Source: Octopus sinensis (lineage: Eukaryota). Taken from it: a DNA stretch of 64,000 bases. The position numbers were made by a program, and so were the translations under genes. The notes beneath the pieces were generated by a model that made no database searches, was not told the origin of the DNA, and saw only the letters and a list, made by a program, of their open reading frames with translations. The stretch lies in NCBI RefSeq assembly GCF_006345805.1, contig NC_042998.1:173724001-173788000 (forward strand). Direction: 5' to 3'. Below are positions 9,035 through 61,180 of the stretch, piece after piece. Every line of letters begins with the position of its first letter. Within the stretch, counting starts at the first letter, position 1.

Positions 9035-9779
9035 GTCGTGCAGTTACTGTTTATATCTCGTTCAGAGATTTATTATTCTATATATACCTTTTAAAAATTC
9101 GTATTTCCCAATCAGTACCAGCGGATTACTTTTTCGTTAAAAATGTTATGAATAGTTTAGTTTATTAAGTGGCAGAGTCTGTGAGTATCAAGGTAAGCCA
9201 CTATTAACTGAACTAGTGGGGCACATAGACTGAGCTGGAAATGCAGCCAAGATAGAGAAGGAGTGTGAGTTAGAGGTAAGAATTGTAAATACCGAGCAAC
9301 AAAAAGAGCAGACGGCATGAATATACGTTTTTAAAACAAAACTTTTATCATATATAGTAGTATTAAAAACGAACTTCTGAAGTAAAATCTGTACAGAAAA
9401 TGTTTATTAAAGCAATATTGACTTCAGAACTGTTAAATGCAATAGAAATACAATAATTTACTGAGATAAACGGAATGTAACATATTCAAGCAAATAATAA
9501 CTTTTGTATTGGCTATATTTACAATGGTTTTAAATGTTATGTCATGAAGGTATATTATTGAAACTGACAATTTCAGGCTGCAACAACAATATGTAAGAGT
9601 ATATCGGTGATTTTCTAAACAATGTTAGTACTACAATCATATGAAATAGTGATAAATGAGTACATAATTGTATCTAAATTGTAGGTGCATATATGTAGTG
9701 TGTTAAGAACGTCTGCTAAAACGAAGAATTAGGGGAAATGTAACTCGATTGAAAATATTGAAAATTGTATATCATTTGT

Positions 9780-10835
9780 AATAATTTGTTTCCATGCTCC
9801 ATTATCCGAATATCGCAATTGTACATATACAAATGAAAATATTTTTCATTAGACCTAATTTTAAGTTACTAAATCCGATTTTCAAAATTTGATTGATTTT
9901 GCATTTTGTGTGGGCAACAAGGAATTTGAAAGTATCAAAACTATACTTGTTACACTTATGTAACCTTTTATAATCAATCATAACTAACATACACGCATAT
10001 ATGAATACAAAAACTTGTATTCATATATTAAAAGTTAAAACTTAAAGATAAGTATAGGCGCAGGAGTGGCTGTGTGGTAAGTAGCTTGCTAATCAACCAC
10101 ATGGTTCCGGGTTCAGTCCCACTGCGTGACATAATAATTTGTTTCCATGCTCCATTATCCGAATATCGCAATTGTACATATACAAATGAAAATATTTTTC
10201 ATTAGACCTAATTTTAAGTTACTAAATCCGATTTTCAAAATTTGATTGATTTTGCATTTTGTGTGGGCAACAAGGAATTTGAAAGTATCAAAACTATACT
10301 TGTTACACTTATGTAACCTTTTATAATCAATCATAACTAACATACACGCATATATGAATACAAAAACTTGTATTCATATATTAAAAGTTAAAACTTAAAG
10401 ATAAGTATAGGCGCAGGAGTGGCTGTGTGGTAAGTAGCTTGCTAATCAACCACATATTCCGGGTTCAGTCCCACTGCGTGACATAATAATTTGTTTCCAT
10501 GCTCATTATCCGAATATTGCAATTGTACATATACAAATGAAAATATTTTTCATTAGACCTAATTTTAAGTTACTAAATCCGATTTTCAAAATTTGATTGA
10601 TTTTGCATTTTGTGTGGGCAACAAGGAATTTGAAAGTATCAAAACTATACTTGTTACACTTATGTAACCTTTTATAATCAATCATAACTAACATACACGC
10701 ATATATGAATACAAAAACTTGTATTCATATATTAAAAGTTAAAACTTAAAGATAAGTATAGGCGCAGGAGTGGCTGTGTGGTAAGTAGCTTGCTAATCAA
10801 CCACATGGTTCCGGGTTCAGTCCCACTGCGTGACA
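9780..10835 (+). repeat. Near-identical tandem triplication, unit ~352 bp, each unit ending in a SINE A head
   Basis: The same 62-aa ORF recurs at 9802, 10155 and 10506 (offsets 353 and 351). Confidence 0.95.
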
Positions 10836-10923
10836 TCTTGGGCAAGTGTCTTCTGCTATAGCCCCGGGCCGACCAATGCCTTGTGAGTGGATTTGGTAGA
10901 CGGAAACTGAAAGAAGCCTGTCG

Positions 10924-10974
<51 letters not shown>

Positions 10975-11477: not shown

Positions 11478-11668
11478 TCTTTTATTCTTTACTTGTTTCA
11501 CCAGCTTTAGTCGAATAAATCGAACCTAAGACTTATACTTTTTAAGCCAAGTACTTATTCTATCAGACTCTTTGCCGAAGCGTCAAGTTACAGGGACGTA
11601 AATATACCAACATCGGTTGTCAAACGATAGTGGGGAGGGGGAGAAAACACAGACACACAAATACATAC

Positions 11669-11710
<42 letters not shown>

Positions 11711-11867
11711 GTGTGTGTGTGTATATATTATAATATATATATATACGACGGGTTTCTTTCACTTTCTGTCAACCACGTTAACTAACTACTATAGTAGAAG
11801 ACATTTACCGAAGGTCACACGCAGTAGGACTGAACCCGGAGCCGTGTGGTTGGGAAGCAAGCTTCTT
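11478..11867 (-). mobile_element. SINE A, 3' part (interrupted; head at 13295-13333)
   Basis: Similarity to the 10761 copy stops at GGGAAGCAAGCTTCTT and resumes at 13295. Confidence 0.85.
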
Positions 11868-13294
11868 TATTTCATTATATTGGCCATCAAGGCCTTACAT
11901 AGAGAAAGGAAGCTGCGGCATGGACATAGACATAATGTTATATGAAGTGAATAAAAGAAAATGAGGATTAATGGGGGAAACAGCGATGCCCGCCGATCGT
12001 TCTTTCCCGAGAATATTGATCTCTTAAGGTATTCATGAGGCAACAAACCTCTTACATTGTTCACAATATTCAAAACCAAATGAGGCACTAAGCCTCTTAC
12101 CTTTTTTCCCCAACTAGGAACTCTCAATCACACTGAGGCTTTTCAACCTCCTATCCATATCCCTACCCCAGATTCTTGACAGGGTCAAAACAGCTTTTGA
12201 CTCAACCTAATCAGCCGCAGGCAAACTGTTCACATTGAGGAGATTGGCTCTACTCCGACCCAGTCCCCGGCGGATACTCTCCTCTATCCACTTGGGTTCT
12301 ATCCCGGATGGCAACTCACAGACGCAAGCTCTTGTCAACTTCTTCCTACAAAACGTGGGAAGCAACAAAGTCTCTTTGCCCTCCAAGCGCTGGCTTGCAA
12401 ATTTGCGAGCCTCCTCAGGGGTGTTAAATAGCAACCATACCGTTGCATATTTGACCCCACTGGAGATGAATTTAATAGTTTTCAGATGCTCTGCCAACTC
12501 CCTTTCGATAACAGTCTTTTGAAATAGGGCGTTGGTGTCGAGCGACTTTGAGTAAGCCCTCAACACCACTGTCCTCTCTTCGAAGTTTTTCAACCACTGT
12601 TTGGGTGGTACAATTTCCCACTCCAAAACATTGTCCTTCTTCTTTGCTATGTTCTTTTTTTAATAAAAAGTTAAAAAACAGTTCAAGATAAAAATTTAAA
12701 AAAGAAAAGAAGGAAGAAAAAGAAAAAAATCAAAAGAATGTCACAACAAAAAGTAAAGAAGAAAAAAGAAAACAGTTCAATAAACAGAATGTCACAAAAA
12801 AAGATAGAAGGAAAGAAAACAACAATTCAAAAAAAACACAGCAAGCAATAAACTTCTGGCCACTCAGTAAGCAAGGACCATTTGGTAATCCAACTTGAAC
12901 CAGGAACGTCACAACTAGAATACAGCTTCCACAAAAATTGGTAAGAAGTTGTTGTATCTTCGGTGAATTCTCACAATTATTTTTTTTTAAAAACTATTCA
13001 TTTGAAATTAACAAATATTTGGATGCAAGATACATCCCCAGAACAACAATTCTCACAATTAAGTGAGAAAAACTATTCACTCAACTGTAGGCAGACCAGA
13101 GTCCAGAATCCAGTGAGGACTTCTTGTTTGTAAATAAAGAATTACGGCAAACAACAAACCCCCAATGGACTCAAAAACAAAAGTCTTACCTTACAGTTGA
13201 GCTTCTTTTTTAATCACAATTTCACCAGGTTCGAACCAGCGTCGCGACTTCAATCAGTGATAGGAATAACACTGACAACGGACGCATGCGTAGA
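11868..13294 (-). mobile_element. ORF1-only L1/Tx1-like retroelement, copy 1 (internally deleted), inserted in SINE A
   Basis: TSD GGGAAGCAAGCTTCTT (11852-11867) / GGGGAGCAAACTTCTT (13295-13310). ORF remnant 12180-12650 (LEWEIVPPKQWLKNFEERTVVLRAYS...) is homologous to copy 2, and the 3' UTR is shared, ending ATGAAATA. Confidence 0.8.
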
Positions 13295-13333
13295 GGGGAG
13301 CAAACTTCTTACCACTGTCACTCCTGCGCCTGT
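13295..13333 (-). mobile_element. SINE A head displaced by the insertion
   Basis: Plus strand reads GCAAACTTCTTACCACTGTCACTCCTGCGCC, the reverse complement of the SINE A 5' end. Confidence 0.8.
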
Positions 13334-32993: not shown

Positions 32994-33030
<37 letters not shown>

Positions 33031-33433
33031 GGCGCAGGAGTAGCTGTGTGGTAAGTAGCTTGCTAACCAACCACATGGTTCCTGGTTCAGTCCCACTGCG
33101 TGGCATCTTGGGCAAGTGTCTTCTGCTATAGCCCTGGGCCGACCAATGCCTTGTGAGTGGATTTGGTAGACGGAAACTGAAAGAAGCCTGTCGTATATAT
33201 GTATATATATATGTGTGTATGTGTGTGTGATTGTCCCCCTAGCATTGCTTGACAACCGATGCTGGTGTGTTTACGTCTCCGTACCACTTAGCGGTTCGGC
33301 AAAAGAGACCGATAGAATAAGTACTGGGCTTACAAAGAATAAGTCCCGGCGTCGATTTGCTCGACTAAAGGCGGTGCTCCAGCATGGCCGCAGTCAAATG
33401 ACTGAAACAAGTAAAAGAGTAAAAGAGTAAAAG
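33031..33433 (+). mobile_element. SINE A (full length, uninterrupted)
   Basis: Matches the 10761 copy and shows the empty target site GGTAAGTAGCTTGCTAACC. Confidence 0.9.
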
Positions 33434-33464: not shown

Positions 33465-33774
33465 TCACCGTGATCTCCGTGACCGACCAGGCTATCAGAT
33501 GTTGCTACACATCGCTGGTCACAATGCGCTTCGCATTGTTTTAGCCTTCAAATGACGCCACCCCACTGGCTAAGCGAGCAAGCCAACAGAAGAAAGAGTG
33601 AGAGAAAGTTGTGTCGAAAGAGTACAGCAGGTATCGCACCACCCCCTGCCAACGCCTCGTGGAGGTTTAGGTGTTTTTGCTCAATAAACACTCACAACGC
33701 CCGGCCTGGGAATCGAAAGCGCGATCCTACAACCGCAAGTCCGCTGCCCTAACCACTGGGCCATTGCACCTCAC
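33465..33774 (-). mobile_element. tRNA-derived SINE, type E (head and body like D, different tail); 3' fragment also at 37685-37790
   Basis: A box TGGCCCAGTGG; shared with D up to CACAACTTTCTCTC.CTCTTT, then diverges. Confidence 0.8.
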
Positions 33775-34089
33775 ACACACACACACAACATATATATGTA
33801 TGTGTGTGTGTATGTATGTATTTATGTATGTATATTTGTATGTATACATCGTAAGTTTTAAAAGTTAAACAGAAGCACGAGAAAGGAACAACAGAAAATT
33901 CACACACAAGACATACGAACGTGCTCTTTCCTCGTCAGTTATCGCGCAAAAAATCATTACAATTTCACACCAACTTTAACGATAATATGGTTCACCTTTG
34001 GTGGAGTCACTAACAAAAAGCAGCTGGGAACAGCGTGCGAACTTTGAGGAAGGTGACGAAAACTAACACGACACATAAATATGAATATA

Positions 34090-34416
34090 AAGGAGCACTC
34101 CGTCGGTTACGACGACGAGGGTCACAGCTGATACGATCAACAGAACAGCCTGCTCGTGAAATTAATGTGCAAGTGGCTGAGTACTCCACAGACACGTGTA
34201 CCCTTAACGTAGTTCTCAGGGAGATTCAGCGTGACACATAGTGTGACAAGGCCGGCCCTTTGAAATACAGGTACAACTCATTTTTGCCAGCTGAGTGGAC
34301 TGGAGCAACATGAAATAAAGTGTCTTGCTCAAGGACACAACGCGTCGCTTGGAATCGAACTCACGACCTTACAATCGTGAGCCGAATGCCCTAATAACTA
34401 AGCCACGCGCCTTCAC
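34090..34416 (-). mobile_element. tRNA-derived SINE, type C (V-SINE-like central motif)
   Basis: TGGCTTAGT A box, GAGTTCGATTCC B box, GTGTCCTTGAGCAAGACACTTT; 13-bp TSD AAATATGAATATA at 34077-34089 and 34417-34429. Confidence 0.85.
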
Positions 34417-39189: not shown

Positions 39190-39598
39190 ATACTCTCTCT
39201 CTTTACTCTTTTACTCTTTTACTTCTTTCAGTCATTTGACTGTGGCCATGCTGGGGCACTGCCTTTAGTCGAGCAAATAGACCCCAGGACTTATTCTTTG
39301 TAAGCCTAGTACTTATTCTATTGAACCATTTTGCCGAACCGCTAAGTTACAGGGACGTGAACACACGAACATCTGTTGTTAAGCGTTGTTGGGTGGGGGA
39401 GACAAACACAGATATACAAACATATACACACATATACATATACATATATACATATATACGACGGGCTTCTTTCAGTTTCTGTCTACCAAATCCACTCACA
39501 AGGCTTTGGTCGGCCGAGGCTATAGTAGAAGACACTTGGCCAAGGTGCCAAGTAGTGGGACTGAACCCGGAACCATGTGGTTGGTAAGCAAGCTACTT
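39190..39598 (-). mobile_element. SINE A, 3' part (interrupted; head at 41588-41627)
   Basis: Similarity stops at GTAAGCAAGCTACTT and resumes at 41588. Confidence 0.9.
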
Positions 39599-41587
39599 TA
39601 TTTCATAAAATTTGTCATCTTAGACAGTACAAAGAGTGTGTAGCTTTGCGGGCTGGACAAACACATTAATGAATGAAAATGAAATAGAATGAATAAATGA
39701 GAGACGAAACCCAACACCCGCCGACTGGATTTTTCTCGAAAACATATTTTCTTTTTTGAAAAATCATTATGAGTTTTCAAACCTCTTACAAGAAGGAGGC
39801 ACTAAAACCTCTTACTTAACATGTTTTTCTTTTAAAACACACAATTGAGGTTATAGACCACTACAAATAATACAATAAGATGAGGTTTCAAACCCTATAA
39901 CGAGGGTCTTTCACCTCCTACTCTTCGATATATCCATCATTATTTTCAGTGCCGCTTGAGTTTCTGTATCCCGCCATTCCCATGCCTCACTCATGTAGGA
40001 CATGTAAGTCGTGTAAGGGCCACCCGGCCATATGCAACACTCCTCCCCAAATCCTTTAAGCCTTTCCCACAAGGGAAACCTTATGACCTTCACAGCTATC
40101 TGCGGAGGCCATTCGGGATCCCGTGTGAAGGGCATATCTACTGTCTCCTTCTACTATTTTTTCCACCTCCCCGCCCTTATAGAAAAAGATAATTAATTGC
40201 TCATCTTTAAGGGTGGGGGTGGTTTCTTCCACCGTGGGTGGCACAACTTCGGGACATGCAGACGGCACATCATCTCCCCGCTGAGATGACCCGTTCTTAT
40301 TTCTTCTTTTTTTCTCTTTTCTTCCTGACTTCGGGAGAGTGGAGCTCTTCCGCTTTGTCCGGAGACTCTCCCGCGCCTCCCGAAGCCTTAGGTTCCTTCG
40401 GCGGGCAACTATTGTTTCCCGCCTTCTTCCTTTTTAATCCTTTTTGAGTTGAGAAGGCTGAAGCCTCCTCGACCACATCCACCTCTCCCTTTGACCGTGT
40501 AGGGGAGGTGGCATCTAGTGACTGTTCCAGGACCTTACAATGGTTCTGGGGGCAGTTCCTTTTAATGTGGTCTGGCTGCAGGCACGAGTGGCACTTGAGG
40601 GGACGTCCCTCATGTATCACAGGATACCTGCAGCCAGCTTTTTTCAGGAAATCTGGAATAACCAGATCTTTTGCGGCCGATGGGGTCCACAGGGTCAACA
40701 TCGCTTTTGAACCTTCCCAATCGACCGCCGGCAATACCCTTACATTTAAGAGCCTGGGCCCGCCATCCCCCAGTCCCCGTCGGAGGGTATCTCCAATCCA
40801 ATCCACATATCCAGGCTCGTATTAATTTTCTTCCACAATATGACGGAAGGAACAGAATTTCCTTGCCTTCTAAAGGCTGACTCGCAAACTGGCGAGCCTT
40901 TTCCTCACGGTTGCATGTTTGACGCGGGATATATATTTTAAAGAGGACAAATATTCTTTAAGTTCATTTTTTATGACTTGTTTTGGGAAGACGGTGATGG
41001 AATTAAGAACTATAGAATAAGTTCTAAGTACCATCGTCTTCTCCTCCATATCTTTTAATCACTGCTTAGGCGGGTTAATTTGCCACTCTAAGAGAGAGTT
41101 TTTTCTTTTTAAGTTCCTTCTCTGCCATGTCAAAACCAGTTCAAAAGTAGTTCAAAAGACAGTCTGCCAAAAAATTAAACCGAATAAAAATAAAACAAAA
41201 TAAAAGACAAAACAGAAATTAAAGTAATGAAAAGAATGAAGAAAGAATTTAGAAAGGAAGAAAGAAAAATAGAAGAAGGGAAAAGTAAAAGAAACACCTC
41301 ACAAATAGCACAGACTGGGAATCCTTTGTAAATCAAAAAGGTAATCTAAATGGCTTATTCTTATTTTTCTGGCGAGATACGTCCACTAGAATTTACAATA
41401 AGCATATTTAAGCAAAAATTCTCAATTCACCGTTACGGTGGTGAGAACCCAGTATTTTGCTCGCTATAGCGAGCCACAATTGACAATTTTTCTTTTTGTT
41501 CTTTTTTTTCTATTCACGGAGCCGAAACTCACATCTTCTCACTCTAACAGTCCAGACCAACTAGTGTTGCATTTTGGTTAACCGGAA
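39599..41587 (-). mobile_element. ORF1-only L1/Tx1-like retroelement, copy 2, inserted in SINE A
   Basis: 15-bp TSD GTAAGCAAGCTACTT (39584-39598) / GTAAGCAAACTACTT (41588-41602). Disrupted ORF 41128-39911 has a CCHC knuckle CHSCLQPDHIKRNC (40552-40593); ~310-bp 3' UTR ending ATGAAATA; no RT. Confidence 0.85.
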
Positions 41588-41627
41588 GTAAGCAAACTAC
41601 TTACCACACAGCCACACCTACACCTAT
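41588..41627 (-). mobile_element. SINE A head displaced by the insertion
   Basis: Plus strand reads GTAAGCAAACTACTTACCACACAGCCACACCTACACCTATA. Confidence 0.85.
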
Positions 41628-60442: not shown

Positions 60443-61180
60443 ATACAATAACAATGCCCCCAAAATATATAGAATTTTTCTTTTTTGCATAGATATAGGA
60501 AACTTGAGTCATCTGCTCATAGGTTTTTTTTTCTTGTCTCCCAATCTATTTATGTATGTGTGTGAATACAGTACATTTGCTTGTATATGTATGCATATGC
60601 TTCTAGATGGAAACATCTACACCTGCGTGATTTTATGTGTGTGTATACGTACATACTTAGACGCACATATGCGCTGTTTATATCTGTATACACAATAATG
60701 TGTATATATATATATATATACATGTGTGTGTGTATGTGTGTGTGTGTGTGCATTTATGTATTTATATGTGACTACTCTGTAAGAATTTCCTAGAACGGTA
60801 TACACACATACACACATACTGATAATAGATATTTAACACATTGCCTACCATGAGCTCCATTTGGGTATCTGCTAAAAACAGTATCACTGCCGGTTGTTCG
60901 TTGTGCTTAAAGTGAATTGCTTATGTACATTGCATTTGCAGAGGTGTGTTTAATAATATTTAGTAGTTAAAGTTTGTCATTTTTAGCTCTAGCTAATTCT
61001 AGAGGACATTTTATGTCATAAATCGCAATTTTTGAACTACAAAAATATTGACTGCTTTGAAAATATTTTTCCTTTTTCTTTTGGCATTCATTGATTTTTC
61101 ATACTCATTCGCATTCGATACTATAGTTTTAAAAAAACTAAAATGTTTAATATTTCAGTTGAATAGAAAAGGATAAATAT

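What the first reader, a model, noticed from the sequence alone, without database searches (positions are those of the whole stretch)
11852..13310. Retroelement lineage that inserts site-specifically into a tRNA-derived SINE (two independent insertions at the same nucleotide)
Seen: SINE A is split at the same position here and at 39584-41602. Both left junctions read GCT(A/T)CTT|TATTTCAT on the + strand. The displaced SINE head resumes after a duplicated 15-16 bp target (GGGAAGCAAGCTTCTT / GGGGAGCAAACTTCTT here; GTAAGCAAGCTACTT / GTAAGCAAACTACTT at copy 2). Both inserts lie in the same orientation as the SINE, between its A and B boxes. The inserts are homologous but clearly diverged, and the host SINEs have different flanks and subfamily variants, so this is not one duplicated locus. 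Known: Tx1-clade non-LTR elements often target multicopy sequences (Tx1L in Tx1D, Keno in U2 snRNA, Mutsu in 5S rRNA, Dewa in tRNA arrays, Kibi/Koshi in microsatellites). Inference: this is a Tx1-related system using an abundant SINE as a renewable safe harbour, which also disables the SINE's Pol III promoter. I know of no description of it in cephalopods.
Basis: partly seen in the sequence, partly recalled or inferred. Interest (0 to 1): 0.9.

Follow-up and report, generated by a model that had tools for sequence, protein, structure and literature searches.

The report
Retroelement that targets an octopus SINE
Two diverged copies of a small LINE-like retroelement, which carry a nucleic-acid-binding gene but no reverse transcriptase, were inserted independently at the same nucleotide of an abundant octopus SINE, so this is a new target for a known kind of site-specific mobile element.

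Summary
SINE A (sense on the - strand) is split at GGT^AAGTAGCTTGCTTAC(C) at 11852-13310 and at 39584-41602. The inserts are 1,427 bp and 1,989 bp, flanked by 16-bp and 15-bp target duplications, and both end in ...ATGAAATA.

The two insertions are independent events:
- Both duplication copies at locus 1 share two private variants that both copies at locus 2 lack.
- The unique flanks are unrelated.
- Host SINE 2 groups with ordinary SINE copies (JC 0.09-0.15) and not with host SINE 1.
- The inserts are far more diverged than their hosts (non-coding JC 0.75-1.0; synonymous sites saturated), yet ORF1 shows dN/dS of about 0.22.

A third lineage, in Octopus sinensis (LOC115225585, intact 281-aa ORF1), has the SINE head at the same 5' junction.

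The element has no LTRs or terminal inverted repeats. It has a conserved 3' end and a CCHC-knuckle ORF1, which fits a non-LTR element inserted by target-primed reverse transcription. No copy carries a reverse transcriptase or endonuclease, so the Tx1 assignment could not be tested; it is only the best guess by elimination. Genome-wide enrichment could not be measured.

Verdict: a real new member of the known class of target-specific LINE-like elements, with a SINE as target.

The parts
11478..11851 (-). Host SINE 1, from after the target site to its 3' tail. It is a divergent SINE A copy with a different central block.
   Evidence: JC 0.21-0.50 to every other SINE A copy. The left end is approximate.
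11852..11867 (-). Locus 1, 3' copy of the target-site duplication (- strand AAGAAGCTTGCTTCCC).
11868..13294 (-). Element e1, 1,427 bp: 5' UTR 12651-13294, ORF1 remnant 12180-12650, 3' region 11868-12179 ending ...ATGAAATA. About 625 bp is deleted internally relative to e2, from after ..AVLTL to RIWG.
12180..12650 (-). e1 ORF1 remnant, 157 codons, 69% amino-acid identity to O. sinensis P0001. The start codon is ATG->ATA; there is one stop and no frameshift.
   Evidence: dN/dS 0.23 against L001.
13295..13310 (-). Locus 1, 5' copy of the target-site duplication (- strand AAGAAGTTTGCTCCCC).
13311..13330 (-). Displaced head of host SINE 1 (- strand GGCGCAGGAGTGACAGTGGT), containing the A-box-like motif.
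39200..39583 (-). Host SINE 2, from after the target site to its 3' tail. It is an ordinary SINE A copy.
   Evidence: 87-91% identity to the uninterrupted copies at 10749 and 33027 (77-89% to the copy at 61180).
39584..39598 (-). Locus 2, 3' copy of the target-site duplication (- strand AAGTAGCTTGCTTAC).
39599..41587 (-). Element e2, 1,989 bp: 5' UTR about 41110-41587, decayed ORF1 40297-41109, about 700-nt 3' region 39599-40296 ending ...ATGAAATA. There is no room for an ORF2.
40297..41109 (-). e2 ORF1 remnant, 2 stops and at least one frameshift. It includes a canonical CCHC knuckle (CHSCLQPDHIKRNC).
   Evidence: (zf-CCHC E=0.002, 18.6 bits, below the 20.8-bit cut-off).
41588..41602 (-). Locus 2, 5' copy of the target-site duplication (- strand AAGTAGTTTGCTTAC).
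41603..41624 (-). Displaced head of host SINE 2 (- strand GGTGTAGGTGTGGCTGTGTGGT).
33027..33431 (+). Uninterrupted SINE A copy, used as the empty-site reference. The target hairpin GGTAAGTAGCTTGCTAACC is at about 33050-33068.

Best explanation
The two inserts are copies of a non-LTR (LINE-like) retroelement family of octopods that integrates site-specifically into the head of SINE A.

Shown:
- Each insert lies in the SINE's own orientation.
- It sits inside a perfect 6-bp-stem palindrome, GGTAAG-N7-CTTACC, which is the anticodon-arm-like hairpin between the A-box-like and B-box-like motifs.
- Each insert is flanked by a 15-16 bp duplication of that hairpin.
- The two window insertions are independent events by lineages that had long diverged under purifying selection on ORF1.
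- A third lineage in O. sinensis has the same 5' junction.

Inferred mechanism: target-primed reverse transcription.
- An endonuclease nicks the antisense strand at 5'-..AGCTACTT^ACC-3'.
- The freed 3'-OH primes reverse transcription from the conserved 3' end of the element RNA (...AUGAAAUA, preceded by a small hairpin).
- The sense strand is cut 15-16 nt downstream, at CTTAC(C)^, and fill-in produces the duplication.

The copies seen encode only an ORF1-type protein with a CCHC knuckle. They have no reverse transcriptase or endonuclease, so those activities, and therefore the specificity, must come in trans from an autonomous partner not present in the data.

That partner is most plausibly an endonuclease-bearing LINE of the L1/Tx1 group. 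I put this step at about 0.4. The confidence given below is for 'site-specific LINE-like retroelement targeting SINE A'.

Splitting the A-box and B-box motifs by 1.4-2 kb should inactivate the hit SINE copy as a Pol III unit. This is inferred and was not tested.
For: Independent events:
- Both duplication copies at locus 1 carry A at position 4 and C at position 14 (AAGAAGTTTGCTCCCC / AAGAAGCTTGCTTCCC).
- Both copies at locus 2 carry T and A at those positions (AAGTAGTTTGCTTAC / AAGTAGCTTGCTTAC). The duplications were therefore made from SINE copies that already differed.
- The flanks are unrelated.

Divergence:
- Host SINE 2 is JC 0.09-0.15 from the uninterrupted copies at 10749 and 33027 (0.12-0.27 from the copy at 61180).
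- Host SINE 1 is JC 0.21-0.50 from all SINE copies, including SINE 2.
- The e1-e2 non-coding distance is JC 0.75-1.02.
- ORF1 has dN/dS 0.23 (L001-e1) and 0.22 (L001-e2). dS is 0.76, 1.5, and saturated for e1-e2.

Third copy:
- P0001 of O. sinensis is 62% identical to a composite query joined from the e1 and e2 ORF1 pieces.
- Its locus reads ..GGCTGTGTGGTAAGTAGCTTGCTTCC|TGTGCATGCG.., and its 5' UTR is homologous to that of e1.

LINE-like anatomy:
- The duplications are 15-16 bp, with no LTR or terminal inverted repeat.
- The last 8 nt are identical in e1 and e2, and a 4-bp hairpin upstream shows 2 compensatory pairs.
- ORF1 has a CCHC knuckle.

Specificity beyond chance:
- SINE A covers about 5% of the window.
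- The junction pattern is expected 0.04 times by chance.

Tx1 by elimination:
- The LINE superfamilies reported as recently active in O. vulgaris are RTE, Dong-R4, CR1, L1-Tx1, Hero and R2 (PMC13282606).
- L1-Tx1 is the one known (my own knowledge) for ORF1 proteins with CCHC knuckles.
- Tx1 families are known to target other transposons (PMC4494074).
Against: - Only three copies could be examined. Genome-wide flanks could not be tabulated.
- The O. sinensis copy has lost its 3' junction: homology ends at L001:10969 and no SINE body follows.
- No RT or EN domain exists in any copy, in long ORFs of the window, or in any of the ten family proteins scanned singly or the 30 members of alignment A2. 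Clade and nuclease type are therefore unknown.
- The RRM fold of ORF1 is not demonstrated: the AlphaFold model has pLDDT 37.
- In both window loci the 5' duplication copy has T where the 3' copy has C at position 7. This shared difference is unexplained.
- All three copies are full-length at the 5' end. The classic sign of separate TPRT events, 5'-truncated copies with the same 3' junction, was not seen.
Confidence: 0.8

Rival explanations
1. There was one ancestral insertion into one SINE copy. The composite (SINE head + insert + SINE body) was then multiplied by retrotransposition of the whole composite, by segmental duplication, or by ectopic gene conversion between SINE copies. The identical position would then be inherited and not chosen anew.
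For: All three copies have the SINE head at the same 5' junction, and all look full-length at the 5' end. Both window loci share T (5' copy) against C (3' copy) at duplication position 7.
Against: - Two locus-specific variants are present in both duplication copies of locus 1 and absent from both copies of locus 2. Under this model that needs four parallel substitutions.
- Host SINE 2 is much closer to uninterrupted SINEs (JC 0.09-0.15) than to host SINE 1 (0.21-0.50).
- The inserts are at JC 0.75-1.0 with saturated synonymous sites. Hosts and inserts therefore do not share one history.
- The unique flanks are unrelated.
- The insert's sense strand has many T runs that would stop Pol III.
Confidence: 0.05
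2. The family is site-specific, but its machinery is not Tx1. The partner could be another endonuclease-bearing LINE clade, or an undescribed one. Alternatively, position could be set mainly by pairing of read-through element RNA (carrying downstream SINE sequence) with the nicked SINE, with the nuclease contributing less.
For: - There is no RT or EN to place.
- The ORF1 family is detectable only in octopods among named hits (Octopus spp., Argonauta hians) and is not linked to any named LINE.
- The element has no poly(A) tail and ends directly on the target, as in co-transcribed site-specific elements such as R2 (PMC4494074).
- Dong-R4, Hero and R2, which are restriction-like-endonuclease clades rich in target-specific families, are also active in O. 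vulgaris.
Against: - Elements with restriction-like endonucleases normally have a single ORF and no separate CCHC ORF1 (my own knowledge).
- A 15-16 bp duplication is typical of APE-type staggered nicking (my own knowledge).
- Tx1 is the clade with documented transposon targets.
Confidence: 0.35
3. This is a chance coincidence, or a generic hot spot. An ordinary, non-specific LINE derivative happened to land twice in a very abundant SINE, at a sequence or structure that many endonucleases like.
For: SINEs make up 11.6% of the O. vulgaris genome. SINE A has about 10 copies in this window. The target is a palindromic hairpin that might be generally nick-prone.
Against: - The same nucleotide, the same orientation and the same duplication length (+/-1) occur in two independent events, plus the same 5' junction in a third lineage.
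- With about 5% SINE A coverage and about 440 positions x 2 orientations, the joint probability is below 1e-8.
Confidence: 0.02

Closest known systems
Tx1-clade target-specific LINEs that insert into other transposons: Tx1L in the piggyBac-like Tx1D; Tx1-Mar in Mariner-N4_AMi; Tx1-8_Crp and Tx1-4_AMi in LTR elements; Tx1-9_AMi in Harbinger (PMC4494074)
   Same: The element is inserted at one fixed position of another interspersed repeat. Several diverged lineages keep the same target. An ORF1 lies upstream. The L1-Tx1 superfamily is present and recently active in octopus (PMC13282606, PMC8967140).
   Different: The target here is a SINE, in its tRNA-like head, which is not among the targets listed in those papers. 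No RT or EN is available, so membership is unproven. The copies seen are ORF2-less. There is no poly(A) or microsatellite tail.
LINEs that target tRNA genes: Dewa (Tx1 clade; named in the finding, and the Kojima & Fujiwara 2004 attribution is my recollection, which I did not read); NeSL-1_TV in tRNA-Pro, LIN15_SM in tRNA-Arg and LIN25_SM in tRNA-Glu (PMC4640811)
   Same: The target is a Pol III-type, tRNA-shaped sequence. The cut site lies in what folds as the anticodon arm.
   Different: The sequence hit here is a retroposed SINE head that ARAGORN (default) and Rfam no longer recognise as a tRNA. It is not a functional tRNA gene. The NeSL and LIN elements are single-ORF elements with restriction-like endonucleases. 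Whether genuine tRNA genes are also hit was not testable.
HAL1 'half-L1' and other internally deleted non-autonomous LINEs (Bao & Jurka 2010, as cited in PMC4494074)
   Same: The copies have LINE 5' and 3' ends and an ORF1 kept under purifying selection (dN/dS about 0.22), but no ORF2. They must use ORF2 protein in trans.
   Different: HAL1 is not site-specific. Only e2 shows the complete ORF2-less architecture. e1 has a further deletion and the O. sinensis copy is cut short, so a stable ORF1-only family is not proven.
R1/R2-type rDNA-specific elements
   Same: They have precise junctions, no long poly(A), multiple old lineages sharing one target, and possible dependence on co-transcription with the target.
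   Different: Their target is a host multigene family under selection, not a selfish repeat. R2 has a single ORF and a restriction-like endonuclease. R1 is an arthropod clade.

Membership tests
Non-LTR (LINE-like) retroelement inserted by TPRT | Target-site duplication of variable length at each insertion, with no LTRs and no terminal inverted repeats | tested here: met
   The duplications are 16 bp and 15 bp. No terminal direct or inverted repeats were found.
Non-LTR (LINE-like) retroelement inserted by TPRT | Conserved 3' end that abuts the target, with the sense strand running from 5' UTR through ORF1 to the 3' region | tested here: met
   Both copies end in ATGAAATA. A hairpin about 15 nt upstream has 2 compensatory pairs (n=2 only). 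The ORF1 orientation is as expected.
Non-LTR (LINE-like) retroelement inserted by TPRT | Encodes a reverse transcriptase and an endonuclease (ORF2) | tested here: not met
   There are no RT or EN Pfam hits in e1, e2, P0001 or the relatives scanned. e2 is only 1,989 bp between its two junctions. The copies are therefore non-autonomous derivatives at best.
Tx1 clade | RT domain groups with Tx1 in phylogeny | not testable with these tools
   No RT sequence was found in any accessible copy, and octopus genomes could not be searched by DNA.
Tx1 clade | APE-type endonuclease N-terminal to the RT | not testable with these tools
   It is absent from the copies. The 15-16 bp staggered duplication is compatible with it but not diagnostic.
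Tx1 clade | ORF1 with an RNA-recognition-like domain plus CCHC knuckle(s) | tested here: inconclusive
   The CCHC knuckle is found: e2 zf-CCHC E=0.002, below the Pfam cut-off, and 14 of 30 relatives hit zf-CCHC. The RRM fold is not shown; the model has pLDDT 37. This architecture is also not exclusive to Tx1.
Target-specific (sequence-specific) retrotransposons | Independent insertions at the same nucleotide of the same target sequence | tested here: met
   There are two independent events in the window, shown by private variants duplicated within each locus, unrelated flanks and discordant host and insert divergence. A third lineage has the same 5' junction.
Target-specific (sequence-specific) retrotransposons | The majority of genomic copies lie in the target | not testable with these tools
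   Three of three copies are in SINE A, but no eukaryotic genome collection is searchable by DNA. The metagenome scan with the junction pattern gave only chance hits.
HAL1-like ORF1-only non-autonomous LINE | ORF1 maintained by selection across lineages that lack ORF2 | tested here: inconclusive
   dN/dS is 0.22-0.23 and P0001 is an intact 281-aa ORF. Only e2 shows both ends with no ORF2. The selection could have acted in autonomous ancestors.
tRNA-derived SINE (the target) | Head recognisable as a tRNA, with A and B boxes | tested here: inconclusive
   A-box-like and B-box-like motifs are seen by eye. ARAGORN at default settings and Rfam find nothing. ARAGORN at 80% threshold gives a Ser(GCT)-like cloverleaf that uses flanking bases.

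The most novel reading that the evidence does not exclude
An old octopod lineage of ORF1-only (HAL1-like) retroelements has kept strict specificity for the anticodon-arm hairpin of a tRNA-like sequence, using an autonomous partner's nuclease in trans. It may have begun on a genuine tRNA gene. It then gained a very large number of new landing sites when SINE A expanded in octopuses. It would be a parasite of a parasite that knocks out SINE Pol III promoters each time it inserts, and could therefore influence SINE dynamics.
Probability: 0.2. Interest if true: 0.7.

Novelty: new member of a known kind. Interest (0 to 1): 0.5.

Why it matters
Target-specific LINEs are models for how mobile elements find safe harbours, and they are candidates for targeted gene delivery. 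Their documented targets are rRNA, snRNA and tRNA genes, microsatellites, telomeres, DNA transposons and LTR elements. A SINE head would add a target that is itself a fast-expanding selfish repeat.

Octopus genomes are unusually rich in SINEs (11.6% of O. vulgaris). A lineage that lands only in SINE heads would have a very large and renewable target pool, would do little harm to host genes, and would inactivate the SINE copies it hits.

It would also give a defined 19-bp palindromic target for biochemical study of an invertebrate LINE endonuclease. The ORF1 kept under selection without an ORF2 raises the question of long-lived non-autonomous, site-specific LINE derivatives.

Tried and rejected
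1. Default blastn between the inserts found nothing. Sensitive settings and tblastx were needed.
2. All three word-index protein searches returned only P0001 and P0035. P0035 has no contig on record. The many octopus relatives found by exhaustive HMMER therefore could not be traced to loci.
3. Exact look-ups of the window's own ORF1 fragments found nothing.
4. The metagenome scan with the 3'-junction pattern gave 34 hits. None contained the SINE or the element, so all are chance.
6. Structure prediction of ORF1 from the shallow permitted alignment gave pLDDT 37, so no fold search was run.
7. A PDB profile search found only CCHC knuckles.
8. Pfam on the two ORFs downstream of e2 ORF1 and on seven long window ORFs gave no RT or EN.
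9. Idea rejected: SINE A is the element's own SINE partner. Their 3' tails share no similarity beyond shuffles.
10. Idea rejected: the match at 34310-34328 is a third insertion. It lies inside a different SINE family.
11. Idea rejected: the two loci are a segmental duplication.
12. Idea not followed up: the shared T/C difference between duplication copies means the 5' copy is templated from donor RNA. The 5' copy at locus 1 shares the local private variants, and the O. sinensis head has C.
Full report
**What is at the coordinates.**
The window is AT-rich (35% GC) octopus-type DNA. It holds about ten copies or fragments of one SINE, 'SINE A', about 440 bp with an internal microsatellite, which cover about 5% of the window.

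At both loci the SINE sense strand is the - strand.
- Locus 1, read on the - strand: SINE head GGCGCAGGAGTGACAGTGGT (13330-13311), AAGAAGTTTGCTCCCC (13310-13295), a 1,427-bp insert (13294-11868), AAGAAGCTTGCTTCCC (11867-11852), then the rest of the SINE.
- Locus 2, read on the - strand: head GGTGTAGGTGTGGCTGTGTGGT (41624-41603), AAGTAGTTTGCTTAC (41602-41588), a 1,989-bp insert (41587-39599), AAGTAGCTTGCTTAC (39598-39584), then the SINE body.

Uninterrupted SINE A copies carry this 15-16-mer once. The 19-nt 3'-junction pattern is expected 0.04 times by chance.

**What the inserts are.**
The two inserts are homologous but very diverged.
- Default blastn sees nothing between them.
- Sensitive blastn gives 61% identity over 681 nt and 67% over the last 214 nt. 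tblastx gives E=8.5e-41.

Both carry, on the SINE's strand, a 5' UTR, an ORF1-type reading frame and a 3' region ending in the same eight bases, ATGAAATA. A 4-bp hairpin about 15 nt upstream keeps its pairing through two compensatory changes, though with only two sequences.

The state of each copy:
- e2's ORF1 has a canonical CCHC knuckle (CHSCLQPDHIKRNC; zf-CCHC E=0.002, just below Pfam's cut-off). It also has two stops and at least one frameshift.
- e1 has lost the start codon (ATG->ATA), has one stop and no frameshift over 157 codons, and lacks about 625 bp from after ..AVLTL to ..RIWG.. relative to e2.
- Neither copy has LTRs or terminal inverted repeats.
- Neither has any reverse transcriptase or endonuclease. 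e2 has both ends intact and is too short to hold an ORF2.

**A third copy.**
One word-index search found a single close relative: Octopus sinensis LOC115225585 (P0001), an intact 281-aa ORF1. It is 62% identical to the query, which I had joined from the e1 and e2 ORF1 pieces.

Its locus (L001, chromosome CM016886.1) reads ...GGCTGAGGCATGGCTGTGTGGTAAGTAGCTTGCTTCC|TGTGCATGCGTT.... The SINE head therefore ends at the same position (+/-1 nt), followed by a 5' UTR homologous along its length to that of e1. Homology to e2 ends at L001:10969 and no SINE body follows, so the 3' junction is lost.

P0001's knuckle has Phe in place of the first Cys.

**One event or several?**
This is the central question. 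Four results point to independent events.

1. Both duplication copies at locus 1 carry A at position 4 and C at position 14. Both copies at locus 2 carry T and A there. A duplication made once and then inherited would need the same two changes to arise in parallel in both repeats of one locus. Duplication of already different SINE copies explains it directly.

2. The unique flanks of the loci share nothing but another SINE fragment.

3. Host and insert histories disagree:
- Host SINE 2 is 87-91% identical (JC 0.09-0.15) to the ordinary uninterrupted copies at 10749 and 33027 (JC 0.12-0.27 to the copy at 61180).
- Host SINE 1 is a divergent variant with a different central block, equally far (JC 0.21-0.50) from every copy including SINE 2.
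- The inserts' non-coding parts are at JC 0.75-1.02.

4. ORF1 comparisons show purifying selection:
- L001-e1: dN/dS 0.23 and dS 0.76.
- L001-e2: dN/dS 0.22 and dS 1.5.
- e1-e2: synonymous sites saturated.
Most of the divergence therefore arose in functional lineages, long before the host SINE copies diverged.

The composite-propagation rival is therefore unlikely (about 0.05). Chance is negligible. With two independent hits plus a third lineage at the same nucleotide and orientation, in a repeat covering about 5% of the sequence, the probability is below 1e-8.

**Mechanism (inferred).**
The target is a perfect palindrome, GGTAAG-TAGCTTG-CTTACC. At a relaxed threshold ARAGORN folds the SINE head as a cloverleaf with this as the anticodon arm. 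At default settings ARAGORN and Rfam find no tRNA.

The junctions imply the following steps:
- A first nick on the antisense strand at 5'-..GCTACTT^ACC-3'.
- Priming of cDNA synthesis on the RNA's ...AUGAAAUA end.
- A second nick on the sense strand after CTTAC (locus 2) or CTTACC (locus 1), 15-16 nt downstream.

Both nicks fall in or at the CTTACC arm as read on each strand. The nuclease and reverse transcriptase must be supplied in trans.

The insert separates the A-box-like motif (TGGCTGTGTGG) from the B-box-like motif (GGTTCAGTCCC) by 1.4-2 kb. The insert also contains many T runs. The hit SINE copy should therefore be dead as a Pol III unit, but this is an inference.

**Which family?**
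Exhaustive HMMER with the ORF1 profile found 62 relatives. Nine reach E<=1e-10, counting P0001 itself. Every named one is an uncharacterised octopod protein, from O. bimaculoides, O. sinensis, O. vulgaris or Argonauta hians. Pfam sees only zinc knuckles in them, and the PDB profile search likewise. The AlphaFold model was too poor to use (pLDDT 37).

Tx1 membership is therefore untested. The arguments for it are indirect:
- The LINE superfamilies reported as recently active in O. vulgaris are RTE, Dong-R4, CR1, L1-Tx1, Hero and R2 (PMC13282606).
- L1-Tx1 is part of the old coleoid repeat set (PMC8967140).
- L1-Tx1 is the group known (my own knowledge) for CCHC-type ORF1 proteins.
- Tx1 families are documented to target other transposons: piggyBac-like Tx1D, Mariner-N4_AMi, LTR elements and Harbinger (PMC4494074).

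Target-specific LINEs as a class target rRNA, spliced-leader and tRNA genes, transposons, microsatellites and telomeres (PMC4640811). I found no paper describing a SINE as the target, and none describing this system in cephalopods. The library is limited to open-access text, and Repbase and Dfam could not be consulted.

**Limits.**
- Only three copies were accessible. No eukaryotic genome can be searched by DNA with these tools, and the one metagenome scan gave only chance hits.
- No 5'-truncated copy was seen.
- In both window loci the 5' duplication copy has T and the 3' copy C at position 7, which I cannot explain. The O. sinensis head has C.
- Whether the family is constitutively ORF1-only (HAL1-like), or these are separate deletion derivatives of autonomous elements, is open.

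**Verdict.**
The Tx1 label is a reasonable but untested guess (about 0.4).

This is a new member of the known class of target-specific LINE-like elements, notable for its SINE target and its ORF2-less copies. Interest is moderate at 0.5.

Noticed in passing
window 9779-10836: A 353-bp unit is repeated three times in tandem at 99% identity. Each unit contains the first ~87 nt of a SINE A head (heads at 10045, 10398, 10749), and only the last runs on into a full SINE. It looks like a very recent tandem duplication spanning a SINE 5' junction.
   Followed up: partly
window 11852-11867 / 13295-13310 and 39584-39598 / 41588-41602: In both loci the 5' copy of the target duplication has T and the 3' copy has C at the same position (- strand AAGTAG[T/C]TTGC). 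The O. sinensis head has C. The chance of this coincidence is roughly 0.03-0.1. It might reflect damage or repair of the exposed strand during integration, or nothing at all.
   Followed up: partly
window ~33466-33780 (-) and ~34090-34410 (-): Two further SINE-like elements with tRNA-like heads, of other families, lie next to the SINE A copy at 33027-33431. The second contains GCAAGACACTTTATTTCAT, a 17/19 chance match to the insertion junction.
   Followed up: partly
L001 10001-10846 (O. sinensis LOC115225585): The only intact ORF1 of the family (281 aa) has FHLC..H....C where e2 has the canonical CHSC..H....C, so the first zinc ligand of the knuckle is lost. The gene lies inside a larger annotated gene (L001 3129-20846). 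Downstream homology stops abruptly at 10969, next to microsatellite-like sequence.
   Followed up: no
protein P0011 (XP_029639579.1, O. sinensis 'K02A2.6-like'): This is a chimeric gene model. Residues ~83-128 are an ORF1 N-terminus 77% identical to e1, closer than P0001 is. They are fused to an integrase-like C-terminal part. It shows that further e1-type copies exist in O. sinensis.
   Followed up: no
window 11746-11867 (host SINE 1): This SINE copy has TAGTTAGTTAACGTGG where ordinary SINE A copies have CCTCGGGCCGACCAAAGCCTTGTGAGTGGATT. It is either a distinct SINE subfamily or a replaced block. No second copy of this variant is in the window.
   Followed up: partly
window 39599-40296 (-) and L001 10846-10969: Just after the ORF1 stop, e2 and the O. 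sinensis copy share a peptide-like stretch in another frame (ACPE..V.P....D(E/D)(Q/-)L(I/V)IFF(Y/H)KGG). This could be the start of a lost second ORF. It has no Pfam match.
   Followed up: partly
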